Assembly (NCBI GenBank): GCA_001179505.1
Contig: CDMY01000613.1
Coordinates: forward strand, 248,001 to 312,000
DNA length: 64,000 nt
DNA from: Vitrella brassicaformis CCMP3155
Lineage: Eukaryota > Protista > Chromerida
Reading direction: 5' to 3'
A model generated the notes under the pieces. That model saw nothing but the letters and a program-made list of their open reading frames with translations. It did no database searches and was not told the DNA's origin. A program made the position numbers and the translations under genes. Positions 26,910 through 46,864 of this stretch are shown here, in pieces (positions within the stretch are counted from its first letter, which is position 1; the number at the start of each line of letters is the position of its first letter).

Positions 26910-28621
26910 ATGATGCGCATCGCCGTCGTCTTCGCTCTCCTCGCCTTGACAGCGGCAGTGGCCGATCCCTATCACCATGACAGTCACTACACGTGTCCCA
27001 AGGGCTGGACCCTCAAGGGGGATGGCAAGGACGCCGTCTGCTACAAGAAGACCACCACCCACGCCAAGGTGGGACACTCACGCACACGCGACAGGCGCAT
27101 GCACCCCTGGGGTGGCTTCGCGAGGGAAGGGGGGTAGATCTGGGCAGAGATCATCATCAGGGGGAGGCACGTGCAGTCAGGGAAGGCCAGTGGACGGCCT
27201 GGGATGCACGCATGTGGCCGGATCTGTGTCCGTGTCTCGCTCATGTGTGTCTGGTGGGGTGTGTGTGTGTGTGTCTGTCTCCTCCCTCACCCACCCTGCA
27301 GGAGGAGTGCCCCAAGGGCACCAAGCCGGAGGGCGGCTACCACAGGAGGAGGGGTGGTGTGGTCGCGGGTCTCCTCGGCATCCTCTTCGGCGGCAGTAGC
27401 AAGGGCAAGTACGTCGAACTGACCTGGTGAGTGAGAGTGCGTGTGTGAGTGAAGGGCATGGCATGCACCCATGCATCAAGGCGACACCGGCAACCAATTG
27501 GATGGATGTTCACATGTCCGCTGCTCTCTCTTCCCCCCCTCCCTCCCTCCCTCCCTGCTTGCCTACAACAGCTACCGATACGAGGAGCATCCCGCTGAGA
27601 AGAGCATGCACTGCCCCAAGGTGAGCGAGTACACACAAGCGGACAGGCACACTGGCGGAGAGGGGAATGGTCTGTCTGTGTGGGGTACGGTACAGGTTTA
27701 CGAGCAGTACGACCACGAGTGCAAGAAGACCTCCTATGCCGATCTCGACTCTTACTGCGAGAAGGGCTACGACATGACCAAGGGCGGCTGCTACACCTAC
27801 GAGTACAACGAGGAGGAGGTGGCCCACGAAGTCTACTGCCCAAAGGTGGGTGGACGGACGACTGAGTGGATGACACATTCGCCGCAATGTGTGCGCGTGT
27901 GCTGCAGGGCTACACTGCCAGCTCCAAGGACGGCAAGTGCGAGAAGTGCTGGACGGACAAGAAGGAGACCCACTGCGACTACAAGAAGATGATGACCAAG
28001 TGCCCCAAGGTGAGTCGAGCGACCAGAGCGCAGCACAGACTACACCCACCTCACACACACACCCCACACCCATTGCTGCACATCGCACTCGTTTTCTCTC
28101 TCACACAGGGCTACGACGAGAGACACTACGGCAAGGAGTACAAGTGCGTCAAGTACACGGAGGAGAAGCATGAGGGCCAGATGTACTTCAAGTGCCCGAA
28201 GGGGTATGAGCAGTATGATGACGTAAGTATGAGGAGCGGGGGGGGGCAAGGCCAGCGGAATGGAGAATGGAATGGAGGGCTCGGTTGTGCTGTGTGTGCC
28301 TCAGAAATGCATCACCTACCACACGACTGACCCTGAGTACGAGTGGCACTGCCCCAAGGGGTACAAGCTGTCTCGCGGCAAGTACTCCTACCGTGGCAAG
28401 AAGGGCCACCATGAATATGTCTGCAAGGCCAAGAAGGAAGTCCACCCCGACTACCATTGCCCCAAGGTGGTGATGAAGAACAGACAGACGATGGCCGTCA
28501 CATTCGCCTCGATCATCGACCGCTTGTGTGTGTGCAGGGGTATGAGCTGCACAAGCACGAGTGCGTCGGCTACAAGGAGATGCCCGCCAGGAAGCAACAC
28601 AAGAAGGGCTACGGCTATTAG
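26910..28621 (+). CDS. Oocyst wall protein (COWP/OWP)-like secreted Cys-repeat protein, Tyr/His/Lys-rich; 8 exons, about 300 aa
   Basis: Signal peptide MMRIAVVFALLALTAAVA, then about 9 repeats of C-P/E-K-G-Y/W-x(5-12)-C, the CPxGY...C unit typical of apicomplexan OWPs. Ends KKGYGY* (TAG 28619-28621). All exons join in frame. Confidence 0.8.
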
Positions 28622-29849
28622 AAGCATGGCGCCACACATAGCCGTCACTTGCGTGCGTGATGTATGATCGCACCCACCCACACTCCCATCGCACCGCTGA
28701 CATACACACTCACTCACACAAGGACTGTTCTCGGCTATCGCACCATTCGTCCACATCTATCGCACCACACACCCCCACCCCCTCACTCCGACACACACGC
28801 CTTCGTACGTACTTGGACAGGGCTTTCTGTCTGACTGATTAGGTTAGTAAGGGTCTGGCTGTCTGGCTGTCTGTTTGTCTGTCTGCCTGGCTGTCACTCG
28901 GTCTGGTGTTTGGGTGCGTTTTAAGCTTTATGTGGCTAGTTAGTACGCGGACGGGAGGGCGGGGGGAGGCATAGTTCATGTCAGTGTCTGCTCGTAGCGC
29001 ATGGGTGGCTTGGCTCTCATCCGGCGGGGCCCCCAGCTAGCAATGGCGACCAATTAGGACACCCGTGTTTTTCTGTGACACACACACACTCGCGCAATGA
29101 CGTGCATCGCCATTTGCTCAAGGCGCACACAAAGAAGGAGACGGCATTTCGGTGGTTTTCGGTTACTATGTAGCAAGCAGGAGGAAGGAGGGAGAGAGGG
29201 GGGCGAGAAGGGTGAAGGGAGGGAGGGACGGGGCGGGAAGAATGATGGATGCCTGAGCGCCTGATCTCATTAGGTCCACTCATTAGGTCTAGTGTTTCGG
29301 TGCATGCACTGTGCTGACTTTTATCTGTCCGTTACTTTTGGCCGTGGGGTTTCTTTCTTTCATTCCAGCACGGACGAGCACATAGATGGACGGGTAGGGG
29401 ACGATCCATGGGATGAGACACACAGTGGGGGACCAGAGACATCCACGAATATCACTTACGCAACCAACACACGTTGACGAGATGTAAACGGGCAGGAGAC
29501 ATTAGACATTCGTCCAGAGCATCTCCACCACGCCGACGCACCAAAGACGGATATATGGGTTGACTTGTGGCAGAGAGACAAACCAACCCTTGATTTGATT
29601 TGTGAACCACTGCCCAGCACCAACCTACAGATATGTCACACGCGTCCAAAGCACGAGTCCACATGAGCTAGTTCGTATGGCACATAATACAACAAAAGAC
29701 AAACACTTGAATCCAGCACATCAAAGTGAAGCGAACAGAAGCCCACAAAGACCACCCCAGTAATGACGACTTCAAGCAAGCATTCGTTCATTCGTTCGTT
29801 CGGTACATGCAACCATACCCTGCGCTGTGCGTGGACTGACTGTTACATA

Positions 29850-30915
29850 TTATGTCTCAAGTGGAGGCACGCCCAGCCCCGACTGCTCCCTTTGTATCTC
29901 GTCAAGCACCGCTTCGGCATCGTCGTCTGCCTTCGGGATGACCTCCACGACCTGATCGAACGTGTAATTCGCCACGTCGTATTGCCACTTGATGAGCTCG
30001 GGATTGGCCAGCACTTCGGCAAGCTCGGCGCCCTGCTTGACGTAGACCGGCCCCTGGACGGTCTTGTCCTCATCAACAACGGCCGACGCGACGATCCCAG
30101 TGTTCTGGTTGAATGTCACGACGCCCAGCTCTTCACTCGTCCCCTCAGGCGTGAGCTGCGGCGCATCTTCTCCTGTGGGGAACTCCAGACCCGCGAAGGA
30201 AGGGCTGGCCGGCAAATTCCCCATCATGTCGTCCGTCACGCCGAGAAAGGCTCCAAGGGCTGCCATGGAGTTGTCTCCCCCAGATGGGTTGAGAGGGGGA
30301 ATGTTCTCCATGTCGATGAGGCCGATAAGGGAGGGACCCTCCTCCGAGATGAGCTCGAAGAAAGCCGCCAGTTCCTCGGGGGGAGGGATTGGCAGGTCTC
30401 CTGGTATTCCTGTCGGGAATGGCGGCAAGTCGCCAAACCCTGGCGGGCCGCCGGGTGGGGTCGGAAATGGCAAGTCGCCAATGCCTGGCGGGCCAGGTGG
30501 CTCTTTCGCCCCCTCCTCTGGCAGCAGGCCCAGGGGGTCCTTGGGGAGGCCCTTCGAATCTTCCTTGGATGGTGGCCCTGGGGGGAAGAAATCTGGTGGC
30601 TCCTTGGCTGGCTCTTGTTCGGGGATGACGACGGCTTGCCAGCCAGCCGGCCGCCTTGCGCTTTCGCCGCGCCCCAGCCTCCGCCTCCTTGCCGGTCTCG
30701 CTGATTGTTGTGGAAGCAGGGAAGGCTCGTTGCTCTGCAGAAGCTTGTTGAGGAAGTCCGGGCATTTGGCTTCCAGCTTTGACCGAAGGGCTGGGATGGA
30801 GGGGTAGGTGACGAACCTCGTGTGGAGGCGGTACGGGACAACGCCGTCCCACCAACGGAGCTTGGGCAGCCTGAAACACAGGACGCCGCACGATAGGCCG
30901 CACTGACAGGAAGAC

Positions 30916-30948
<33 letters not shown>

Positions 30949-33900
30949 ATGAGAGGCACATACATACACACATACATACACACATACATACGGGGAAGGC
31001 AAGTCAAGTGTCATTGCTTGCAAGGCGGTCAATAGGTTGGTAAGTTTCTCCCTCTTTAGTGTCCCGTACCAGTTTGAAGTCGATTGCGGCTGTGACAGGG
31101 CATCCATCCTTGATGAGCTCGACGGGCGCGCACTTGTCATTGCTGGCTTGGTACTCAAGCGGCGCCTCCTCGCAGTGTGACCGCCTTGCGTACACGTGGT
31201 CCACCCACATCCAAGCGCTGCACTTTGGCCGCATGTTGACCTGCGATGCTTCGACTTGCAGCAGGCGCCTGCGTCTCCGTGCAGCGGGCTTGCTGTCCAT
31301 GTAGTCGCTGAGGTACTGGGCACCAATCCTCGCCCCGTTGAGGAAGGTGACGGCGACCTTGCCGCCGATGTTGTCCACATCATCGACTGATTGGATGTTG
31401 AGCGCATCGTCGACGCCCTCATTGACAAAGTCGAGCCCCCCGTTGATCTGCGCCAGGAATGGGTAATCTTCGATCGGGTTGGCCCCTGGCTGCTGCATGA
31501 CACCTTCTGAGAACTGATTCAGCAGCTGACCGGCACCAGTCATGGCCGCCTGGCCCTGGTCGGAGCCCAAGAACTCTGCCACCGCTGCCGCCTCTCCCAG
31601 GTAGCCGAGGTCGTCTCCCTCTCCGGTCTCGCCATTGGCCGCCTGCACAGTGACCTCCCACGTCGCCTCGCCCCTCACGGTCGTCGTGTCGTTGACAGTG
31701 GTCACCCAGCACCGACATATGACATTGTTGTTTGCCCCTTGGTGGCGAAGCTCGTTCTCGTAGAGGATGGTGTCTCCCGTCCTGTATACTCGCATGCCGC
31801 AGCTGCCTTCGCCCTTGAATATCGCTGTGGCGCAGACGTCCCCTCCGAAGTCGTTGGGGTCGGTGAAGATGTCGCTCCTCAGGGTCGCCTTGCACTGTTC
31901 GGTTCCGCTCAGATATGCAGGCCTGCGAAAAAAAGAAAGAAAGGAGCAAGACAGCCAGGAATGCTTTGCGTCATGTCTCGATGCCTAGCTTCCGCTGTAT
32001 GAAAAGAACTGCGCTTACGCGAACGCGCCTTCGTATTGGCCGTTGAGGGCCACTAATGGAATGCAGCACTTCATGCCTTGATTGAAACACTCAACCTTCG
32101 GCCTGCCCGCTACACGCGCATGCGCACACGAGATACAGACGAGAGAGAGACATGTACCAGCCAGAGTACCCATCTATGTGACATACATATATACGGCTGA
32201 TCTCCTTTTGTCTGACTTACATCCTGCGGGAGGCAGGCTCTCCAGTTTGAGGTTGGGGTCCTGGGCAGGCACAGGCAGCCGCTTGACCACGCCTGCGTCC
32301 CTCGCAACCAGTGCCAGCGAAGCCACCTGACCGACATCCACATACTTGGCGACTTCCATGCCCAGATTCAGACCAGTGGACAGCGCCTTTGAGCCAGTCG
32401 ACAGAAGTGCGGGCAGATCCTGGGCGAAGGCACTGTCCCCAGCCAGGGCAGCAGGGAAGGTACCCAAGGGGAACGGGGCTGCGGCTCCAGGGAGGAAGAT
32501 GCCACCGGCATTCGCCAGCCCCCCTGCCAGTCCCCCTGATGCCTGTTCGTTTTGTGCGCCTTGGTCGTTCTGGCACACCGCCGGACCGGACACGGTGCCT
32601 GGGGACGAAAACTGGCCGGTAGGGTTGCTGAAGAGGGTGCACTCGTTGGGCGGCCTGAACGAGAATTTGGTGCAAGCCACGGGAGTCAAGGTCTGCTCGC
32701 AGACGGCCTGGCAGGCGGCTGCTGTGTTGAAAGCCGTCGGTCTGTCGATGACAGTGCCGCCGTCCAGTACAGTGTTGTCCGTAAAGCAGTTCACAGAACC
32801 TGACACGCGTAAGCAGACGCACCGCAGGCACGATGTCAAGTACGCCAGCCGATGAAGTTGTCTGCTTGCTCACCTTGTGGTGCGGCTCCATTCGCTGCGA
32901 CAAGTGCGCTGAGCAATGCTGCAGCCGGATCGTTCTGCTGACCCACTTGCTGCCCCTGTCCGGCACTAATGGCGCCTGCCATTTGCCCCGCCAGCTGTGC
33001 ACCGGCACCAATGATGTCACCGATGGGGATCTCGCTGATGGGGATGCCCTGCAGGCGGCGTCTTCTTACGTCTCTGGCCGACTTTTTGCGCTGCTGGAAG
33101 TTGAACCAGGACTGTGCGTAGTCCTTGAAGAGAGGCATCGCGGGAACCTGGCCTGGCGTGAAGATGCGGCGGTTGCCGCTGAGGAGGGAGGCGAGAAGCA
33201 TGTCGGGCGCTACCATGTCTCCGAGGGCCGCCTGAACCATGGCTGCTGTTCCAAGAACAGACGCCGTCGCCAGGCTGGTGCCTGTGTAGGTAGTCTGTTG
33301 GCCGGATGAGTCCAGGGTGAGCAGACTGCCAGGAGCCCACAGCACGTTCCGTGTGATGAAAGGTATGTTGGTGTAGTCTGTCGGCTTCCCAGTCGCCGCA
33401 TCGATGGAGCACACACAGAGAAGGGCCGCACCGGGGACATCACAGAGGTTCCAGTCCAGGTAATTCTTGAGGCTGACTGGTGTCTTGGAGCCTTGCAGGG
33501 TGGGCAGTGGGGTCGACTGGAGCTGCGGCTGAATGCCTTCGTTGCCGCACGGGATGAAGAATACGTGGCCGAAGCGCGATGCCCTTTGCATGGCCGTCTT
33601 GAGGATGTGGGGTCCGGCTTTGGCCTGCTGTGACGAAGGGAACTCGCCGAACCCAAGGGCGAGGTAAGCCATCGATGCCCTCTGCTGAACAGAGTATTCG
33701 ATGGCCGCCAGCACATCAGCAAGGTCGGCTCCGCCCTTCTCTTCGTCCCAGACTTTCAGCGGCATCGCGAGCGGCGCAATGCCAAAAAGCTTTGCATTGC
33801 AGCCAATGCCCTTCACCGATGTGGTCGTGTCCTTGGTGTCGACCTTGCTGTCGCAGTTGCCGGCATAGAGCACTCCTGCCGCTGTGTCGTGGGTACCCAC

Positions 33901-34917
33901 CCCGCTGGCGAGCGCCTTTGCTTCGCTGTAGCCGCTTCCGCCCTTCTGTGGAGGCTTTGTGAAGTCGTAGCCGACGAAGTCGTCCACGAATCCATTGCCG
34001 TCGTCGTCGATGCCATTGTGGGGGATTTCGCCATTATTGCGAAAGAAGACGTCACCGACCAGCTGGTCGGCCGGCCGGCCCTCCTGCTTTTCCACTTCAG
34101 CCGCCTCCTGCACATTGGCGACTCCCTCCCAAGACGCGCCTCCCAGCTCCCCCATTGACATGGGTGCCATGGCCTCGATGAAGAAGTCCATGCCCGTGCC
34201 GATAAAGGAACTGAGGACCCCCCGCTGTCGCCCGGGAGCTTGATCAGAGCTCGTCTCTGCTCGTCTAGCATATTCTGACCCCTGGTAGGCGTTGAGGACA
34301 TCCTGTAGCGGACCGACCCCGCCGAAGAGCTCGTCAGTGGTCTGGCGGAACCATTGGAAGTCCATGCGCTCGGTTGTCTTTATGTCGCCGCTCGGCCCGT
34401 TGGGGCTGAGAAGGTTTCCCAAGAAGCCGCCTTGGGAGGCTTGCGTCTGGGAGATGCTGGTCATGAGGAAGGACGGCGTACACGTGACCATGTTCTGATA
34501 GGGCCTGAGCAAGTCCCTCAAACAAGCATACTGGGTCTCGTCTCGCACGCTGAAAAGCTCGATGCCAAGCGATGGGAGAAACTGGTTGCTGAATAGCTCT
34601 GGGCACAAAGCAATGCGCCCTCGCCATGCTGACATGAGGTCGTCCAGCAGGCTTACGCGATTGGCGTCGAGGTTGCGTTGTAAGCCGTCGTTGAATAGGC
34701 AGATGACGCGCCTTAGCGGGCCCTGGGAGCCTCCTTTGGACGGTTTGGGACCCTCTTGTGTGCCAGAGGTATCTCTGCCCGGCGGGAACGGGCCACCGAA
34801 TACGGGCGGGGATGGCGATGGAGGCCGCAACGGGAAGAGTTGCCCTGTCGCCGTGATGAACAGACAGAGCGACGCAAGTGTCAGCAGGCAGACACGGGAG
34901 CCCGAGGAAGCAGTCAT
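29850..34917 (-). CDS. Secreted multidomain protein: S8 subtilase (probably inactive) + PAN/Apple domain + ZP-module-like region + Pro-rich/acidic tail
   Basis: Signal peptide MTASSGSRVCLLTLASLCLFITATG. S8 hallmarks NGEIPHNGIDDDGNGFVDDFVGYDF, MPLKV, IPCGN, WAPG and GTSLA. Exons ~34917-32872, 32799-32221, 32173-32158 (16 nt), 31922-~31070 and ~30900-29850 join in frame; the last junction is the least certain. Stop ends at 29850. Confidence 0.75.
32158..32173 (-). other. Predicted 16-nt micro-exon (ATGGGTACTCTGGCTG)
   Basis: Flanked by cacatag| and |gtacatg. It converts the phase-1 donor at 32220 to the phase-2 acceptor at 31923, giving PPAG-YGYSGW-PAYLSG. Skipping it gives an immediate in-frame TGA. 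Confidence 0.65.
32572..32790 (-). other. PAN/Apple domain (six-Cys) within the subtilase gene
   Basis: CFTDNTVLDGG...AAACQAVCEQ...CTKFSF...ECTLFS...GTVSGPAVC matches the Apple-domain Cys spacing and the terminal VSGPxxC motif of apicomplexan microneme proteins such as MIC4. Confidence 0.85.
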
Positions 34918-38900: not shown

Positions 38901-41900
38901 AAGCTGATGTCTCCAAGAATACTGCGTATGGCGTTCTGCCCGGGCGGCATATGTGTCACGTCAAAGACGGTAGTGCCGAAGTTGAGGCTTAACGGGAAGG
39001 ACTCTGGCAGGGCGAGATCTAGAGTTGAGACAATGCCAAGTCCGGTCCGGCCGGGGGGAGGATCACCGAACTGAATCTTGTCCAGTGAGGCGCTGGATAG
39101 GTCAATGGACCCAGCGTCGTCTCCCAACAAGGGCAAAATAGTCTCAAGAGGCATTTTTCCGATAGGCAGGGTGCCAAGAATGCTGCCAACCGTCACTGCG
39201 GCTGCACCGACAAGCTGCAGCGTAAGCTGCTGTGCTGACGGCCGGTCTTCCGATAGTAGCAACTTGACCAGGTCGGCAAATGCCTTGCCGTCTTCCTCTA
39301 CCTTCAGTGTGCCCTCAAACTCCCAGCGGATGTTGAGATGGTTTGTGTTGACGCCTGTCTCCCTGTTCATGAGCACTGCAGTCTGTGGTGGCACACGAAG
39401 AACGCCGATCTTCTTGCCATTTGGCCCTTGAAGATTGCCATTGATGGCGAGCTCTTGCACATCGAGACGGGAATCTGGCCCAAGCGGATCTCTGACCCTA
39501 ACCACTAGGGCCCCCCTGAGCTGCACATCGTCGTCCCCAACAGGCTCCAAGCTCAGAGACGAGGCGTCTACCGACTCGACAAGGGAGTCGCCACCCAAGA
39601 TGCTGAAACACGAGAAGGAAGGAATGAAGTGTTCCATGTACCATTGAGACTGATCAGCTCACCCAGTAGTCGGCATGGATAATGCGACGCCACTGAGCAC
39701 CCGGGTCAGCCAAACAGGCGGTCTCTGCCTCATGGACCTTGGCATGATTTTTATCGTCGCCATGTCATCGCTGCCGAAGAGCGCATTCACCAGCTCGCCA
39801 AAGAATGCCTCAGAGTCCACCCCCTGGGGCGACTGCAGCATGCCCCTGACCTCCAGACGCGACTCCTTTGGCGCTGGCGCCAGGTTGGTTTCCATTGTTC
39901 TGAAATCGCCTATCCTTTGCGTGGTCCCGCCGACGTCCCGCTGTACAATCCACTGCATATCGGCAAGTCCCAGGCCAATTGGCGCAGGATTGCGGATAGT
40001 CAGTGCCACCGAGATCACCATTCCGTTCGCACTCTCGCCGGACTGCTGCAATGACCGCGGCCCGCCTTCTTGTGGCTGAGGTTGCAAAAAGCCTGGTGCG
40101 ATGGGAGTATCGGAGCCCGAGGGGAAGAGAAATTCCTCGATCGTCAGATTGTGCATCTCGAACAGAGACGTGGCGGCATCTCCCTCGTCTCCTGAGCCCC
40201 CCATGGACAGCTCCCTATCGATCTCCACTTCGCCCAATTGCAAGCGGCCTAATGGGGTGTCGACAGTAGCATCTATCCTCCCGACTAACCGAACAACATC
40301 AACAGTGCCAGATGATGTCTCCTCGCCGACAGAATCGAAGATCCTCTGTTTGAAGGTCACGAAAGTGTCGAGATCGTCCACTACGAGGGGGACGGAGAGC
40401 GGGACCGTCACGGCAAGTCGGCTAGAGCCATCACTCTGAAGGAGACACAATGAGGCAGATGAAGTCCCGCCTTCTGTCGGAGGGTTTCTGCTTACACCAT
40501 TGACGTATCTCCTATCCTCCGTCTTGACGGGTGGAGACTCGATCCTCCCTAACACAGGCGCATCGTTTCTTGCTCCATTCACCAGTGAAAGAGACATCGC
40601 CACAGATTCGATCACAATGTCCTGAGATGAGCCCAAAGGGTTGTTGATCACGACGTCAAATGAGCCCTCCATGGGAATGGCAGACAGCTCAGCACCGTCC
40701 TGCACTTCGTCGAAGCGCAAATACAAGTCCTGGGTCTCAACCGATTCAATCAATTCTCCCCCACGGATAGACTCCGTCAAGCTGTCTAGGCTGAACGAAG
40801 AATTCCCCGCACAAATGAAGCCAGGAGACAGACAGATCACGAGGTGTATGGAATGACATGCGTCTCTTATGACCTTGTCATGGTCGTATCGAATTTCACG
40901 CCCTCCGCTACTTTCGTCACCCAGGCCGGCAGCATCTCTTGTTCCCCGCTACTGGTCCCGACAGGGTAGCCTAGTCGCACCCCTTCCAGTCCAATTCTCA
41001 AAGGGGTGGCTGCCAGAGCCGCCTGTATCAACTCCTGAGCTTGCCTCTCGTTGGCCTCTGTGCGCCATAGGTAGCCCCTAAGCCGCACTTGGTTGTCGCC
41101 CGGCTCGAGTACAAAAGGTGTGTTAATCTCCAGTGCACCGACGTCTTGGTTGCCATATCTCAATGCGCCCAACAGGGTCAGTTTGCCGAAGTCGATCGTC
41201 AACGCGAGGGTTGACGTCAGTGTGATGGCAATCTCTGTCGCAAGCTTGCTCTGAAGGACCGCCACTCTGCCGTATTCCCCAAAAACATTCGCCATTTCGA
41301 GGGCCGTAAGGTTGTCGAAGTCCTCGACGAGACGAAAGTCATCCACACTGACCTGAAGGCTTTCTTTTTGCTGACCATCCTCTGCCTCGCCAGACAGATC
41401 GAAATTTGAAGTTACACGTAATCCGTCGAGGTTCAGCCGGCCCAGTGGAGTCTGCACGTCGACTCTGGCACTACCTTGGATGCCAAGAGGGGCGGCAATC
41501 GTGGTCGTACGCTCCATGAGGCTGCTGACAGTATCGGCAAATAGCGATCCATCTCCCGTGGGGCTGAGAATGCCCTGCAGGGGGAAATCAAGACGGATCT
41601 TGCCGTTGTCGAGCACCTGCATGGACCGACCGACACACAAACTGGACACACTTCCATCCTACAATGTCAGATTGTTATCGGTGTCAGTTCACAACTCGCC
41701 TTCTGTTCGATCGCAAGGATCTTCGTCTGCTGTTTGACTTCAGCGAAGCACTCCCCGCGTCTCGACAGTAGATTAGCACTCAACTCGAGGTTTTCGACCG
41801 TCACGGGCGACCGTTCCCCCAACGGGTTGACAATGATTACCCCCACCTCAGCTACAACACTTATGGCTCGCTGTGGCTCTGTCAGGCCTCCTAGATCAGC

Positions 41901-44900
41901 CTGGAGACCGCGTATCGACACGTCCTCGACCAATTCACCTCCACCCGTCAAATCGCTCAGTGGGGGAAGCTTCGTCTCGATGGCCACCGTGCTCAATGCC
42001 TCCTCAAGCCACTTCGGCGGCCCTCTTTCTTGCACAAAGGGCACTGTCTTGACGATCACGGGAAGATTGCCGCCTTTGACATACTCGCTGAAACGCCGAG
42101 ACACAACGGCTAGGTCCGAGGCTGCCGGGTTGAGTCTCCCGGTGAGCTTGATGGGCGTCCTGCCTGGGCGCAGGTAGACCGCTCTTGCCTGCACGATGCC
42201 AAGCAGCACAGCCAAAGCCCGTGCCTGCAGCAGACGTCTGGCGGGATTGGCAGGGCCAGCGTCACTGGAAGGTGGCAGGTACAGTTCGAAGGAGAGGTCA
42301 CCCAAATATAGCGATGCCTCCGATGGGTTGAGGATGTCTGCCGTCGCCGAGATAGCAAGTCCCTGATCGTCCGGCGGTGGCCCCTCAAAGACGAACGAAT
42401 TCAGGTCGACCGATATGCCCTCGCTCTCCTGGCTGCCCATTGGGAGTGTCATATCGAGAGGTATGGCCGACAGCTGCAGGGGAATATCAAAGTATGTCCG
42501 ATCCCCATCGTCATTGACAGTGGCGCTGACGTCGATGTTCATTTCCGCCGTTCCACTCATCCGCAGCAAGGCATAACCCTCCCGAGCAAGGTCGGACACG
42601 AAAGCTGCGAACGGTATGGTCAGGCCTGGCTCGCGAAGGGCTGCATTGTCCAATGCGAGAGCCTCCCTCTCGAGAGTGATGGTGTCATTGATCTGGAAAA
42701 GCAGTCTGAGCTTGTCGTTGCCGTCCACTTGCTTAACCTCTTGGACTAGAGGAGCGCGGCTAGAGAGAATCAGGCGACCGATGGTGAATGAGGGAGAGTC
42801 CTCGCTCTCTCGATAATAGAGTGTGGAGTTGATGGAGACGTTGCGGACGGCGAAGGGCACGTCGGGGCCGAAGGGCCTGATGGCGGTGGCGTCAAGGACA
42901 CCTGAGATGATGATGGTGTCTTCATCCACCGGCTCCAGCGACAGGTTGAGAACGTCCACATCTTCCAAGAGCTCATCGCCCAGGCCACTACGAGAAAAGA
43001 CACACACACACACCAGAGGAGCATTTGTGTGTTCCTGATGAGTGTGTGACTACATCTTCAATTGGTGCGTACCCAGCCAGACTAAATTCCAATGCCAGCT
43101 GATCGACTATCGAACCCAGCCATGGAGGCATCTTCGTTTGCGTGCCTTGCTTGTCGTCATGGCCAGTCACTTGGATGGGCAGCGATCGACCCTGAAACAA
43201 ACCTTGTACCAATCTGCTCATCTCCTCCGGCACAGTAGACGCTTGCGCGTGCTCATCCGCCGCTATCGGACCTTCCAGGCGTAGCCGAGACACGTCTGGT
43301 GCTGGCACGATGGTGGGAGACACCATCTTCAGATCGCCGCGAAGGGCCAGTGATTTGAGGTATACATGCAGCGGTAGATCCAGGTCATCGAATATCACGC
43401 CGAACTCCGAAGGGTTCGCTACAGCAACGTCAATCAAGACCTCCATCGTGAGGTCTTTCGTCGCATACGAGCCCCCCGGTCCCCGAAACGGCGATGACGG
43501 GTTGATCTCCAGCTTCGTGACTTCGAACATGACGAGCTTAGGCCCTAGGCTGTCGAAGAGATTACCTGGCGGGAGGGATGTGACCTCGTCCACCGGCAGG
43601 TTGGAAAGGTCGAGGCGACCAATGGGCGTATCGACGCTTGCTGATACATTGGCGTTGATAATCAGCCCGACAGGTGCATTCGAAGCTCTCCCACCGAACA
43701 GAGTGTCTGTGGCAAAGGAAACAATTGTGTCGCCGCTCCCGATAAGGACCATATCGCCGATGAGTGGCATGCGTATAGCCAGGTTGTCTGGTGTGCTGGC
43801 GTTCATCATGATGGCCTTGCTGGGGTATGTATTGACGCGCGTGAGAGGGCTGCCGTCGGACCCGCTGATGGTAGCGGCCAGACTGTAAGTCTCCACAATC
43901 ACCTGCTGTCCTCGAAGGGGGTTCTGAATCTCGACGTCGAGGGTGATATTCAGTGCCAGCCGATCAGCGATCTCACTGATGGTGACAGTCACGCTGTCGT
44001 ACTCGAGACTTTGCACCAGCTCTGAGACACAGCCCGCCGTCTCACTTGTCTTTTTGGTCAGCTCGCACAGGGGTGGAAGCGTGGTGATGGTCTCGAAGGA
44101 GGACACAGCGTCATAAAACCATTGAGGCCGGCTTGGAATCCTCTCTGAAAAAGTCCACAGTGCGCCCTTCGGTGGCTGGACGATCGCCACTCGCAAAGAC
44201 AGAGGCTCCTCGCGCAGATAGGCTGAAAGCCCTTTAGAGACTGCAGGTAGGTCACTCTCGTCAGGCCTCAAGCGTCCCTCGAGAGCTAGTGTGTTGTTGC
44301 CTGGCATGATGTTGACATTGTACGCCACCAGGTAGCCGAGGAAAGCCGCGCTCTGGAGACGTCTCCCTCTCGACAACTGTGCATCGCCCTCCAGTGTGAT
44401 TTCAAAGGCAAGGTCCCCCAGCGAGATTGACGCGTCTGAAGGGTTGATCAGCGTGGCGTTGGCAGCAAGGTCAAGTGCATCTTCCTTGCTGGTGGATACA
44501 AAGTCGAAAGCCGACAACTCGATCGCCAGACCTTTATCGGCCCCACCTTCGCCGGTGTTGCTTCCCAGGCCCGTGAGCTCCTGTGCTGTCTCGATGGTCA
44601 GGTTGGGAAGAATAAGTGGCCCCAGTGCGGTTTCCAGTCGCACTTCAGCGGCACCTTCCTTGATCAACATAGAGACCGACGGCTCAGTCAGGAATGCTCT
44701 GGTGAAGGCGCTGAAGGGCTTCCCATTCTCTGTTAGCGTCATAGTGCCATCGAGGTCGAACTCCAATGGCCTCTCAGCAGACAGGTGGCGGCCCGCGTAT
44801 GGGTATCCAATATAGCTGGACGTCTGCTTGACGATTAAGCTGGACGCAACGTACGGGCCATTGCCATTCAGCCAATCGTACTTGGACATGTCTGCCGCAA

Positions 44901-46864
44901 ACACGCACTGGCAATGCACACAGTCTATTGGTTATCCCTCTGCAAATGCTCTGTTTACTTGGAGGCGAGTCGCCACGTGCGACTGGCTTGAGAAGGGCGC
45001 GCAGCTTGGCGATGCATGGCTCTCCTGCCGCATTGCCGTCATGGATGGAAGCGGTCATATTCACCTATGTAGCAGAGCACACCAGCAGCTTTGATGATGC
45101 GAATTAAACCCCTTGCTTTTCTTCTCTCTTTCCCTCCTTGCTTTCCCTCTCACCTGATCGACATCTATCGGAGAGTTTTCCCCCAAGGGATTCTCGAACA
45201 CCACCTCTACCCTGCCACCAAGGCCAACCGTCGTGCCGCTCGCAGTCGATGGTTGGTCATCCGGGGTTAGGTCGATCCGCAGGCCTTCGAAGGATAGAGA
45301 TTTGAACACGCCACCCAGGTTGGGCAGAGGACCGATCGATGGAGAGACCTCCAGTGCTTCGACAGCAGCTGTGATGTCGATACACACACACATGAAAATC
45401 GTCTTCTGATCAGCACAGCCCTCACATCTTTCTCCTTGACCCCCTCTGGCCGTGGCTTACTTACAGTTGAAGACTGTCTTGGTCGTCCCGTTGCCGTCCA
45501 CAATCACATTTTCTGGAAATGCGCCGTCAACCACGGCCGCCACAAATTTACTGATCACCCCCGCCCTCTCCGGAGACCCCTCCCCGGCCACAACCACCTC
45601 CAGCTTTCCGTTCATCTGCCACTTGTTTTGTCCTGGCTGTATGGACGCCTGGCTGGCTTTAAGGGATCCGACAGAGATGCCTTTGTAGACAAGGCTGAGA
45701 CTGACGTCGCCGAGCTGGTTGATAGTCAGCTTAGAGGCAGACTCGAATTGGGCGGTGAAGGAGATGTCGACCCCGCCGGAAACCTTGTCACTGCCGTCCA
45801 TTCTGATGTTTCCGGTACTAAAGTTCGTCAGAGCTGAGCCCAAGGATGATCCCATTGCTGCACACCGAGTACACATGAAGCCAGAATACATGTAAGAGCT
45901 TCTGTCTCGCTATGTTGTTGAATCGGTCACCATCGGCGTCCAGCGTCCTGTCGAATTCCAGGTCTGATATGCCGATCTTGATCCCAATCAAAGTGATGTG
46001 CACTGTGAAGGGCTTAGGAGCCACCACACGCCACGTCGGCCGGCTCCCATCGCCACTTTCTCGAACCAGCTGTGCGGTAAAGCGATTCCACGCATCGATG
46101 TCCGTGATGGTGAAGGAGGTGTTGAAGGCAAGCGCGGATCGGCTGCCCTTGAGCCGCATCTTTGGCATGGTAAACCTGCCGAGTCTGCTCTCACCGCTCG
46201 CCTCCACTCCATACGTGTCCAGCGAGAGTGGTGGCAAATCGGCCTCTATGTCCGAACCGAAACTGCTGCGGCGAAGCTCGGCATCGATCTTAATGTAAAA
46301 GCCGTCTTGTCTCGGTGCGGTGATATTGATGCTGTCGATGGCCAGCTCACTCGATCCAATGACTGACTCGACGATAGGCTTCAGGCCGACAGTAAAGAAA
46401 AGTGCCAGACCCACACCCATCAGCAGAAGCAAAGCCACGGCCACAATGGCCGATATACATAAGCAGCGCTGCCATCGATTGCCTCGAAGCGGCCGCGTCA
46501 GCCAAGCAATGACTGAGCCGCCTAGTCTCTTCTTCCCGGAGGGGGAGAGTTCGGTGCGCGAGGATGGAGCAGGTTGCGGGCTCCGTGGCGTAGATGATGG
46601 TGATGACGGCTGACCGGCTTCCAATCTGGATCTGCCCGTGCACGGAGAGGGGGTCGCGGCCGAGCGGTTGGCTGCAGGGCTGGCCGCTGCTGGGGCTGCG
46701 GCTGATCTTGCCCAGGACGTGAAGTTGAGGACGCGTTGGACGACAGATGCGCTGACCGTGGTATTTGTCCGCCCAGTTGATCCCGCATCGTCATCTGTTC
46801 TCAATGCGCTCATGGGGGATGGCTTTGGCGAATGAGTCTCCTGAAATTCAGCAGGCTGACTCAT
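35975..46864 (-). CDS. Giant type II membrane protein (about 3,300 aa) built of tandem DUF3712/Tag1-like (LEA_2-related) beta-rich modules
   Basis: ATG 46864 and an N-terminal TM (CISAIVAVALLLLMGVGLALFFTVGL). Then IVESVIGSSELAIDSINIT...LGRFTMP...FTITDIDAWNRFTAQLV, and recurring NPS/NPL, LGDL, F.+.+SQY+.G and PxWL..A+ motifs. Long exons with short GT-AG introns. Last exon ends EYRTVVDFRDDSIPVTIITD* (35975). Confidence 0.75.
36469..36507. repeat. Short 12-bp tandem repeat (GAGACATCAAGA, about 3 copies) in an intron
   Basis: Directly visible; lies inside the predicted intron near the 3' end of the DUF3712 gene. Confidence 0.8.

What the first reader, a model, noticed from the sequence alone, without database searches (positions are those of the whole stretch)
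30670..31922. Zona pellucida (ZP) module-like region in a unicellular alveolate secreted protein
Seen in sequence: after the Apple domain comes CKATLRS...VCATAIF...SCGMRVYRTGDTILYENEL...VICRCWV, which resembles ZP-N (CGT...YxN...CxY). A spacer follows, then VDNIGGKVAVTF...MWVDHVYA...HCEE...KCAPVELIKDGCPV...FRLPKLRW...YRLHTRFVTY...KCP. This aligns motif by motif with ZP-C (vxlG+xly+ev; +fv++CwA; LIxxGCP; FxfxxFxF; +y+hCx+x+C). A polybasic RPARRRRL follows, where ZP proteins carry their furin cleavage site. Established: metazoan ZP-C pairs C5-C7 and C6-C8, and PAN+ZP architectures occur in nematode and insect matrix proteins (LET-653, NOAH-1, NompA). Inference: the C5 and C7 positions are lost together (VYA, HT) while the GCP Cys and a later Cys are kept, as expected for a diverged true ZP fold. 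To my knowledge ZP modules are described almost only from animals, so this could be a polymerising wall protein outside Metazoa.
Basis: partly seen in the sequence, partly recalled or inferred. Interest (0 to 1): 0.88.

Follow-up and report, generated by a model that had tools for sequence, protein, structure and literature searches.

The report
ZP-like module in chromerid alga protein
A transcribed gene of a single-celled alga related to malaria parasites (Vitrella type) encodes a secreted protein whose middle part is predicted to fold like the two-part zona pellucida module that animals use to build egg coats. Relatives occur in Cryptosporidium, gregarines and Toxoplasma, although a 2026 review still treats this module as animal-only.

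Summary
The quoted motifs are all present on the minus strand. They belong to a spliced, transcribed gene for a 1539-aa protein: signal peptide, degenerate subtilase, PAN/Apple, ZP-like module, Pro-rich tail.

- **Fold.** An AlphaFold2 model of residues 865-1250 matches only ZP-module proteins at the top of PDB searches. Foldseek ranks 1-35 are all ZP (uromodulin E 2e-7). In an exhaustive VIA-align search the top 9 of 48,161 chains are ZP (ZP-N Z 9.5, 2.5 A, 21% identity).
- **Sequence.** Pfam ZP-N hits are below threshold (E 0.004 in this protein). The Pfam ZP-C hit (E 0.001) is in the Selenidium orthologue only. A family profile hits only a uromodulin-type chain, in both halves and in order (E 0.001).
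- **Weak points.** ZP-C is the weaker half. Only its second half is recognisable, a stand-alone model failed, and the Cys at the C5/C7 positions that the apicomplexan orthologues keep are missing here. Polymerisation and cleavage at the RRRRL sites are inferred.
- **Relatives.** Orthologues exist in Cryptosporidium, Selenidium, Rhytidocystis and, with ZP-N only, coccidia.

The scan has already noted ZP-like modules at other loci of this genome. I read this as a new, divergent variant of a known module outside animals.

The parts
32874..34917 (-). Exon 1: signal peptide (34843-34917), then a degenerate subtilase (S8-like) domain. The Pfam match covers 33214-33879. First RRRRL site at 33052-33072.
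   Evidence: Pfam Peptidase_S8 E 3.3e-5. The alignment to subtilase 3vv3_A keeps the GTS Ser motif, but there is no His at the HGTH position. The donor site is defined by an RNA joint.
32221..32799 (-). Exon 2: PAN/Apple domain (32573-32797), then a low-complexity Gly/Ala/Pro spacer.
   Evidence: Pfam PAN_1 E 9e-4 here. PAN_1 is above threshold in orthologues P0004 and P0006. RNA joints are seen at both ends.
32019..32109 (-).
   Evidence: RNA joints 32109>32221 and 31921>32018 in run X1, the latter also in X7. Present in P0021. This Cys is invariant in 8 of the 9 aligned family members and aligns to a Cys of uromodulin-type chain 28yj_A.
31652..32101 (-). ZP-N-like domain (protein residues 878-995). 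It spans the intron at 31923-32018 and has 8 Cys.
   Evidence: AF2 pLDDT 65-83. VIA-align vs uromodulin ZP-N gives Z 9.5, rmsd 2.5 A over 97 residues, 21% identity. Pfam ZP-N E 0.0041-0.0045.
31229..31651 (-). Long interdomain linker (residues 996-1136). It is mostly predicted disordered, with one family-conserved segment. Second polybasic site ARRRRRLL at 31259-31282.
   Evidence: pLDDT <50 for model residues 131-277. Conserved A/G/Q columns in alignment A1. Motif scan.
30750..31228 (-). ZP-C-like core (residues 1137-1240). It spans the intron at 30903-31069 and has 8 Cys.
   Evidence: Family profile vs PDB: the sole hit is uromodulin-type 28yj_A over ELIE.GCP...F.F..F.F...LxC (E 0.037 for ZP-C alone, E 0.0012 for the whole module). 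Pfam ZP-C E 0.00075-0.0012 in the Selenidium orthologue. pLDDT 60-75 in the whole-module model. Only ZP-C chains match this half (Z 4.2-4.6). The stand-alone model failed.
30675..30698 (-). Third polybasic site, RPARRRRL, starting 22 residues after the last ZP-C Cys.
   Evidence: Sequence. Conserved in Vitrella paralogues but not in apicomplexan orthologues.
29850..30674 (-). C-terminal tail: Pro-rich region and acidic C-terminal segment, then the stop codon. No hydrophobic anchor.
   Evidence: Translation. No Pfam hit. RNA contig coverage.

Best explanation
The region is the core of a genuine but divergent zona pellucida (ZP) module, with ZP-N, a long linker and ZP-C. It sits in a secreted 1539-aa protein of a Vitrella-type chromerid alga.

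The protein's order is: signal peptide, catalytically degenerate subtilase, PAN/Apple, ZP-N, a ~140-residue linker, a ZP-C core, a polybasic site and a Pro-rich tail. It belongs to a family shared with Cryptosporidium, archigregarines (Selenidium), Rhytidocystis and, with ZP-N only, tissue-cyst coccidia.

Shown here:
- the gene structure and its transcription;
- the family;
- a ZP-N fold prediction that is specific for ZP proteins;
- collinear ZP-N and ZP-C sequence and structure matches.

Inferred:
- The protein enters the secretory pathway.
- It is cut at one or more of its three RRRRL sites by a basic-residue or RRL-specific protease.
- Its ZP module then mediates homo- or heterotypic assembly into an extracellular matrix, such as the cell or cyst wall. 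This would resemble the PAN+ZP apical-matrix proteins of nematodes and insects.
For: **Gene model**
- RNA joints define four of the five exon boundaries and an RNA contig ends at the fifth.
- The spliced CDS is 4620 nt with one stop.
- Independent protein P0021 is identical at 1538 of 1539 residues.

**Structure** (AF2 model of residues 865-1250)
- Foldseek vs PDB: ranks 1-35 are all ZP-module proteins (uromodulin 1.9e-7, ZPD filament, ZP3/ZP1, endoglin, ZP2, ZP3 ZP-N), with alignments of ~365 columns across both halves.
- VIA-align: ZP-N Z 9.5, against 4.6 or less for the non-ZP chains in that list.
- Exhaustive VIA-align over 48,161 chains: the top 9 are all ZP, ZP-N or VERL. The C-terminal half is matched only by ZP-C chains (3qw9, 5bup).
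- AFDB clusters and the ESM Atlas return ZP families.

**Sequence**
- Pfam ZP-N E 0.0045 here; 3 of 9 family members hit it, best 0.0011.
- Pfam ZP-C E 0.00075-0.0012 in the Selenidium orthologue.
- The family profile vs 177,635 PDB sequences has a uromodulin-type chain as best hit, E 0.0012. The ZP-N and ZP-C stretches are collinear and three ZP-N Cys, the GCP Cys and the LxC Cys align.
- The ZP-C-only profile has that chain as its sole hit.

**Family**
- Orthologues share PAN plus this module.
- Three of the four full-length apicomplexan sequences end in a hydrophobic C-terminus, by my reading. Selenidium P0006 does not.
- Cys counts stay even (8+8) despite substitutions.
- Cys variation in bona fide ZP-C domains has precedent (PMC7456536).
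Against: - All Pfam ZP hits are below the gathering thresholds (17.8 vs 24.7 bits; 19.4 vs 24.6).
- This protein's own ZP-C piece has no Pfam hit.
- The ZP-N-only profile finds no ZP protein in PDB by sequence.
- A stand-alone model of the ZP-C region failed (pLDDT 42.6, no Foldseek match).
- In the whole-module model ZP-C has only about five strands at pLDDT 60-75. The first half of a canonical ZP-C (strands A-C, IHP) is not recognisable.
- ZP-C-only structural matches are weak (Z 4.2-4.6).
- The alignment behind the model has only 10 sequences, so AF2 may lean on learned folds.
- The linker is about four times the canonical length.
- C5- and C7-position Cys are absent in this protein.
- No EHP-like strand or membrane anchor follows the polybasic site.
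- The language-model feature search found nothing.
- Secretion, cleavage and polymerisation were not tested.
Confidence: 0.72

Rival explanations
1. Only the N-terminal half is ZP-related (a ZP-N domain, as in PLAC1/Oosp/VERL-type ZP-N-only proteins). The C-terminal Cys-rich region is an unrelated small domain whose LIxxGCP / FxFxxF motifs resemble ZP-C by chance.
For: - The stand-alone ZP-C model failed.
- This protein's ZP-C piece has no Pfam hit.
- ZP-C-only chains score only Z 4.2-4.6.
- Coccidian orthologues keep ZP-N and the start of the linker, but no ZP-C is detectable within 10 kb downstream in T. gondii. ZP-N can therefore exist in this family without ZP-C.
Against: - The ZP-C-only family profile has a uromodulin-type chain as its single PDB hit.
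- The Selenidium orthologue hits Pfam ZP-C at E about 0.001 over profile positions 69-132.
- The only PDB chains matching the model's C-terminal half are ZP-C domains.
- Two-domain ZP chains align 157-205 residues, against about 97 for ZP-N alone.
- The order and position after ZP-N are as in ZP modules.
Confidence: 0.15
2. The module is a true ZP module but does not polymerise. It would act as a cell-surface or secreted binding module, as in endoglin or betaglycan, or the protein would work mainly through its PAN and pseudo-subtilase domains as an adhesin or ligand trap.
For: - No EHP-like strand and no C-terminal anchor in this protein.
- The polybasic site after ZP-C is not conserved in apicomplexan orthologues.
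- Endoglin and betaglycan are among the structural matches.
- From general knowledge, PAN/Apple domains in apicomplexans are typically adhesive.
Against: - The best structural matches are the polymerising uromodulin, ZPD and ZP3 modules, not the receptor type.
- The PAN+ZP architecture is that of matrix proteins such as LET-653 (PMC4970718, listed).
- From general knowledge, Vitrella has a thick wall that needs structural proteins.
Confidence: 0.25
3. There is no homology with ZP at all. The region would be a generic Ig-like beta-sandwich plus a Cys-rich stretch that AlphaFold2 forced toward a familiar fold from a shallow alignment.
For: - Mean pLDDT is only 50, from a 10-sequence alignment.
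- All sequence hits are below curated thresholds.
- The ZP-N-only profile gives only a weak FN2-like match (E about 1).
Against: - ZP proteins stand far above other Ig-like folds (Z 9.5 against 4.8 or less), with 18-21% identity.
- Pfam and PDB profile hits independent of the model point to the same two families, in the same order.
- Cys positions align with canonical ZP Cys.
Confidence: 0.05

Closest known systems
Polymerising ZP modules of uromodulin, fish ZPD and ZP3 (PDB 4WRN, 6TQK, 28YJ, 3NK3)
   Same: - ZP-N then ZP-C in one secreted protein.
- The ZP-N fold superposes at 2.5 A with 21% identity.
- Shared motifs: CG...Y.N in ZP-N, and LI..GCP, F.F..F.F and L.C in ZP-C.
- A polybasic site shortly after the last ZP-C Cys.
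   Different: - The linker is about 140 residues instead of about 30.
- There are four extra Cys in ZP-N.
- The C5- and C7-position Cys are absent, and three new Cys lie in the segment LCGLSCGVLC.
- The first half of ZP-C (with the IHP) is not recognisable.
- There is no EHP-like strand and no TM or GPI anchor.
- Scores are below the Pfam thresholds.
- The organism is an alveolate, not an animal.
PAN/Apple + ZP apical-matrix proteins of nematodes and insects (LET-653, NOAH-1, NompA)
   Same: The domain order is PAN/Apple followed by a ZP module in a secreted matrix-type protein. This architecture is known from the literature (PMC4970718 and PMC7665627, listed).
   Different: - The alveolate family has a pseudo-subtilase domain in front, except in coccidia.
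- It has a much longer PAN-to-ZP spacer and a longer ZP linker.
- No orthology is shown. Whether the shared architecture reflects descent, transfer or convergence is open.
ZP-like domains reported in choanoflagellates (Salpingoeca rosetta), as summarised in the 2026 review PMC13361971
   Same: They are non-animal, divergent and lack the full canonical Cys set.
   Different: - The review says the choanoflagellate domains lack the full bipartite architecture. Here both halves are detectable and collinear.
- The host lineage (Alveolata) is far outside Holozoa.
ZP-N-only proteins (PLAC1/Oosp, VERL repeats, ZP2 N-terminal repeats)
   Same: The coccidian members of this family (T. gondii ..._293560, Neospora, Hammondia, Besnoitia) appear to carry ZP-N without ZP-C. 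VERL and ZP2 ZP-N domains are among the structural matches.
   Different: The window's protein and the Cryptosporidium, Selenidium and Rhytidocystis orthologues also have the ZP-C-like core.

Membership tests
ZP module (ZP-N + ZP-C) | ZP-N immunoglobulin-like fold | tested here: met
   This is a predicted model only. VIA-align vs uromodulin ZP-N gives Z 9.5, rmsd 2.5 A over 97 residues. The top 9 of 48,161 PDB chains are all ZP, ZP-N or VERL, and the best non-ZP chain scores 4.8.
ZP module (ZP-N + ZP-C) | Four conserved ZP-N cysteines (C1-C4) at canonical positions | tested here: met
   Cys 882, 915 and 946 align to Cys of uromodulin-type 28yj_A in the profile alignment. Cys 974/976 sit in the last strand (ICRCW), where C4 is expected. 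These Cys are conserved across the family, except that C1 is not aligned in P0008. Disulfide pairing was not testable.
ZP module (ZP-N + ZP-C) | Score above the Pfam gathering threshold for ZP-N (PF23344) | tested here: not met
   17.7-17.8 bits against a cut-off of 24.7, E 0.004. The threshold is an operational criterion, not a structural one.
ZP module (ZP-N + ZP-C) | ZP-C fold | tested here: inconclusive
   The whole-module model has pLDDT 60-75 and about five strands in this region. Only ZP-C chains match this half (Z 4.2-4.6). Two-domain ZP chains align 157-205 residues. The stand-alone model failed (pLDDT 42.6, no matches).
ZP module (ZP-N + ZP-C) | Score above the Pfam gathering threshold for ZP-C (PF00100) | tested here: not met
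   The window's protein has no hit. The Selenidium orthologue scores 19.4 bits against a cut-off of 24.6 (E 0.00075-0.0012), covering profile positions 69-132 of 133.
ZP module (ZP-N + ZP-C) | Bipartite order ZP-N, linker, ZP-C within one extracellular protein | tested here: met
   ZP-N and ZP-C matches to the same uromodulin-type chain are collinear. Foldseek alignments span about 365 columns. The N-terminal signal-peptide-like segment was judged by eye.
ZP module (ZP-N + ZP-C) | Conserved ZP-C cysteines (C5-C8) | tested here: not met
   In this protein the GCP Cys and a late Cys (AKCP) are kept. The positions where orthologues have Cys (WPxxC, and RLGC aligned to LHC of 28yj_A) are V/Y and T. 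Apicomplexan orthologues keep them. Cys variation is known in true ZP-C domains (PMC7456536).
ZP module (ZP-N + ZP-C) | Consensus furin-type site, followed by an external hydrophobic patch and a membrane anchor | tested here: inconclusive
   RPARRRRL starts 22 residues after the last ZP-C Cys. No conserved hydrophobic strand follows it, and this protein has no anchor. Three of the four full-length apicomplexan sequences have hydrophobic C-termini but no conserved polybasic site.
ZP module (ZP-N + ZP-C) | Polymerisation into filaments | not testable with these tools
   This needs expression and EM, or wall proteomics.
Subtilase S8 (active protease) | Asp-His-Ser catalytic triad | tested here: not met
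   The Ser motif (GTSLAT) is kept. The position aligned to HGTH of subtilase 3vv3_A has no His. The Asp-motif position reads IGTGMD. The Pfam match is partial.

The most novel reading that the evidence does not exclude
The bipartite ZP module is not an animal invention. A PAN+ZP matrix protein family would already have been present in the common ancestor of chromerids and apicomplexans, either from an older eukaryotic origin or through an ancient transfer from an animal host. It would still build polymeric walls, such as the cell, cyst or oocyst wall, in Vitrella and in parasites such as Cryptosporidium. Assembly would be controlled by cleavage at RRRRL-type sites.
Probability: 0.3. Interest if true: 0.9.

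Novelty: new variant of a known kind. Interest (0 to 1): 0.76.

Why it matters
[quoted passage not shown] It knows only incomplete ZP-like domains in choanoflagellates and none in fungi or plants (PMC13361971). My full-text searches found no paper linking ZP domains to Vitrella, chromerids or apicomplexans.

A collinear ZP-N/ZP-C module in an alveolate family would have three consequences:
- It changes the known range of this polymerisation module.
- It opens the question of ancient origin against transfer from animals. From memory, transfer has been proposed for other animal-like adhesive domains of apicomplexans.
- It gives a testable candidate for wall or matrix assembly in these organisms, since the family reaches Cryptosporidium, gregarines and, as ZP-N only, Toxoplasma.

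The altered Cys pattern and the long linker would also widen what a ZP module can look like.

Tried and rejected
- **First splice model.** My first by-eye model missed the 91-nt exon, and RNA joints corrected it.
- **Direct sequence searches.** phmmer of the main exon against PDB sequences gave no hit. Pfam on whole orthologues at E<=0.1 gave PAN but no ZP; only domain-sized pieces gave ZP hits.
- **Language-model search.** The feature search (ESM Atlas) on the main exon and on the ZP-N and ZP-C pieces gave scores of 0.68 or less (about 0.5 for the two pieces), to TraU, MCR and viral families. I rejected these as noise from Cys-rich sequence.
- **ZP-N-only profile vs PDB.** The only matches were fibronectin type II repeats of MMP2 (C...CATT) and SmB, at E 1 to 3. 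Both were rejected as chance.
- **Stand-alone ZP-C model.** A model of residues 1085-1300, run to look for strands A/B and an EHP, gave pLDDT 42.6 and no Foldseek match. It is uninformative.
- **More sequences.** A metagenome scan for further family members returned pattern matches but no relatives, and the second scan could not be built. There are no paralogues inside the window.
- **C-terminal segment.** A C-terminal segment that looked conserved by eye is not significant pairwise (E 0.9).
Full report
**1. Gene and organism**

The finding lies on the minus strand of a GC-rich (about 60%) region.

The only close database relative of the main exon was an unnamed protein of Vitrella brassicaformis CCMP3155 (P0001, 73% identity over the ZP-C part). 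Its locus (L001, contig CDMY01000791.1) is a degenerate paralogue, about 88% identical in DNA. It lacks most of PAN, ZP-N and a 147-nt piece of the linker. The window is therefore from V. brassicaformis or a very close relative.

Assembled RNA contigs (run X1) carry three intron-removing joints with GT..AG ends on the minus strand: 32797>32872, 32109>32221 and 31921>32018. One RNA contig ends exactly at 30902.

This gives five coding exons:

| Exon | Window coordinates |
|---|---|
| 1 | 34917-32874 |
| 2 | 32799-32221 |
| 3 | 32109-32019 |
| 4 | 31922-31070 |
| 5 | 30902-29850 |

The CDS is 4620 nt and encodes 1539 aa. A 1539-aa protein held by JGI (P0021) is identical at 1538 positions. The P0001 gene model uses the same ...KL|CG... 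junction.

**2. Architecture**

The protein has these parts, in order:
- An N-terminal hydrophobic signal-like segment (residues 1-25, judged by eye).
- A subtilase-like domain (Pfam S8 E 3.3e-5). The Ser motif is kept, but the Asp and His motif positions are substituted (IGTGMD; no His opposite HGTH of 3vv3_A).
- PAN/Apple.
- A low-complexity spacer.
- The ZP-like module (about residues 878-1240).
- A Pro-rich tail that ends without a hydrophobic anchor.

Three near-identical polybasic sites (RRRRL) lie after the subtilase-like domain (616-622), in the ZP linker (1119-1126) and after ZP-C (1258-1265).

**3. Family**

An exhaustive phmmer search of 1.84 billion representatives with the main exon found only eight proteins:
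- a full-length Vitrella paralogue (cluster of P0002; P0009 = CEL97892.1, 1652 aa);
- P0001;
- Cryptosporidium proteins (C. muris CMU_016990, C. canis, C. serpentis);
- Rhytidocystis pertsovi;
- Selenidium pygospionis;
- one unnamed Logan protein;
- one spurious bacterial hit.

The apicomplexan proteins also carry PAN upstream. By my reading, three of the four full-length apicomplexan sequences end in a hydrophobic C-terminus; Selenidium P0006 does not.

A second search from the Rhytidocystis module added Toxoplasma gondii (..._293560), Neospora, Hammondia and Besnoitia. Their models stop after ZP-N and the start of the linker. tblastn finds no ZP-C within 10 kb downstream in T. gondii.

In the family alignment the ZP-N Cys and the CG, NN.xCxC and ATWE motifs are invariant. 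The ZP-C core is C..W...C.AW.S.CEE....C.P..LIE.GCP....F......G..SFSF....F.....R..C.......C.......C.

**4. Is it a ZP module? Sequence evidence**

Pfam on domain-sized pieces gives ZP families as the best hits, all below threshold:
- ZP-N: E 0.0045 for this protein once exon 3 is included, against 0.031 without it. It is E 0.076 for C. canis. Three of nine members hit it, best 0.0011.
- ZP-C: E 0.00075-0.0012 for Selenidium, over profile positions 69-132 of 133.

A profile of six whole modules, searched against 177,635 distinct PDB sequences, has one meaningful hit. It is the uromodulin-type chain of the ZPD egg-coat filament (28yj_A, E 0.0012), with two collinear stretches:
- ZP-N, in which three Cys and the CG...Y.N motif align;
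- ZP-C, in which ELIE.GCP, F.F..F.F and L.C align.

The ZP-C-only profile keeps that chain as its sole hit (E 0.037). The ZP-N-only profile finds no ZP protein by sequence.

**5. Is it a ZP module? Structure evidence**

AlphaFold2 on a 10-sequence alignment (residues 865-1250) gave pLDDT 65-83 for ZP-N, below 50 for the linker and 60-75 for the ZP-C core. The search results:
- **Foldseek vs PDB.** Ranks 1-35 are all ZP-module proteins, the best at E 1.9e-7, with alignments spanning both halves.
- **VIA-align re-scoring.** ZP-N against uromodulin gives Z 9.5, 2.5 A over 97 residues and 21% identity. Two-domain chains align 157-205 residues. Non-ZP chains in that list score 4.6 or less.
- **Exhaustive VIA-align.** This search of 48,161 chains is independent of Foldseek. 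The top nine are all ZP, ZP-N or VERL, and the best non-ZP chain scores Z 4.8. The only chains matching the model's C-terminal half are ZP-C domains (betaglycan Z 4.6, ZP2 ZP-C Z 4.2).
- **Predicted-structure libraries.** AFDB fold clusters return ZP-domain proteins for most named hits. The top hit is an unannotated 'Transmembrane protein', A0A023B6M6. The ESM Atlas shape search returns ten ZP families out of ten rows.

Against this, a stand-alone model of residues 1085-1300 failed (pLDDT 42.6) and matches nothing.

**6. Cysteines**

ZP-N has eight Cys: four at canonical positions and four extra.

In ZP-C the apicomplexan orthologues have eight Cys. These include one in WPxxC and one in RLGC, and the RLGC Cys aligns to LHC of 28yj_A. 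The Vitrella proteins have V/Y and T at these two positions and lack a third Cys (MPC). They gain three Cys in LCGLSCGVLC, so the count is again eight.

It looks more like disulfide reshuffling, which has precedent in nematode ZP-C domains (PMC7456536).

**7. Mechanism**

- **Shown:** a transcribed gene for a protein with a signal-like N-terminus, PAN, and a ZP-N/ZP-C-like module conserved across chromerids and apicomplexans.
- **Inferred:** secretion; cleavage at RRRRL sites, which fit both furin/kexin-type R-x-R/K-R and apicomplexan RRL-type motifs (from general knowledge); and ZP-mediated assembly into a wall or matrix.
- **Classical ZP activation.** The usual scheme is a furin site, loss of an external hydrophobic patch and release from a membrane anchor. 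Only the position of RPARRRRL supports it here. The site is not conserved in apicomplexan orthologues, no EHP-like strand is conserved, and the Vitrella proteins have no anchor.
- **Linker site.** The basic site in the linker is the more widely shared one: Vitrella, Rhytidocystis, Selenidium and the unnamed Logan protein P0008. Cleavage there would separate ZP-N from ZP-C, which is not a known ZP mechanism.

**8. Comparison and novelty**

The module resembles uromodulin, ZPD and ZP3-type ZP modules. In architecture the protein resembles the PAN+ZP matrix proteins of nematodes and insects.

I do not file it as a canonical member. The curated Pfam thresholds and the full C5-C8 Cys set are not met in this protein, and the ZP-C fold test is inconclusive. 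I file it as a divergent variant and homologue.

A 2026 review calls the canonical module a metazoan synapomorphy and mentions only incomplete ZP-like domains in choanoflagellates (PMC13361971). Full-text searches found nothing on ZP domains in Vitrella or apicomplexans.

Earlier notes of this scan report other ZP-like modules at other loci of the same genome. I did not test those. They suggest that this gene is one of several.

**9. Verdict**

- The polymerising-wall function is plausible but untested.

Noticed in passing
window 32874-34917 (-): The N-terminal subtilase-like domain looks catalytically dead. The Ser motif GTSLAT is kept, the Asp-motif position reads IGTGMD, and there is no His opposite HGTH of a solved subtilase. 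The same degenerate motifs occur in paralogue P0009.
   Followed up: partly
window 33052-33072, 31259-31282, 30675-30698 (-): Three near-identical RRRRL polybasic sites divide the protein into four parts: pseudo-subtilase, PAN+ZP-N+linker, ZP-C core and tail. They fit both furin/kexin-type and RRL (TEXEL-like) cleavage motifs. The linker site is the one shared with Rhytidocystis, Selenidium and the unnamed Logan protein P0008.
   Followed up: partly
L001:5014-7761 (V. brassicaformis CDMY01000791.1); window joint 31282>31430: A degenerate paralogous copy, about 88% identical in DNA, lacks most of PAN, all of ZP-N and 147 nt of the linker. It is annotated only as a 313-aa fragment (P0001). The 147-nt deletion joint appears in contigs of runs X2 and X3, which presumably come from that copy.
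   Followed up: partly
L002:15854-18261 (T. gondii contig KQ983281.1): The Toxoplasma orthologue (..._293560; also Neospora, Hammondia, Besnoitia) has PAN, ZP-N and the conserved start of the linker. No ZP-C-like sequence is detectable within 10 kb downstream, so it is possibly a ZP-N-only derivative.
   Followed up: partly
AFDB cluster hit A0A023B6M6: The best AlphaFold-DB cluster match of the model is an unannotated 713-aa 'Transmembrane protein', aligned over its residues 24-247. From memory of the accession series it may be a gregarine protein. This suggests further ZP-like modules in alveolates with other architectures.
   Followed up: no
window 29853-30137 (-): The acidic C-terminal segment (VVTFNQNTG ... 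EVIPKADDD ... LDEIQRE) lines up by eye with a segment before the C-terminal anchor of apicomplexan orthologues (... MEILP ... LLLDKYQ). Pairwise BLASTP is not significant (E 0.9).
   Followed up: partly
window 27866-28667 (+): Downstream neighbour on the other strand: ORFs with repeated Cys-containing motifs (KCPKGY, HCPKGYK, YHCPK), possibly exons of a small Cys-rich repeat protein.
   Followed up: no
window 41670-44919 (-): Two adjacent long ORFs match Pfam DUF3712 (E 3.9e-8 and 1e-3). They probably belong to one multi-exon gene.
   Followed up: no
window 30681-30683 (-), protein residue 1273: There is a single amino-acid difference (R in the window, P in P0021) just after the third RRRRL site. 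DNA runs X2 and X3 show a few other variant letters at 30211-30217, and X2 alone at 30651-30694; these may come from the paralogue.
   Followed up: no
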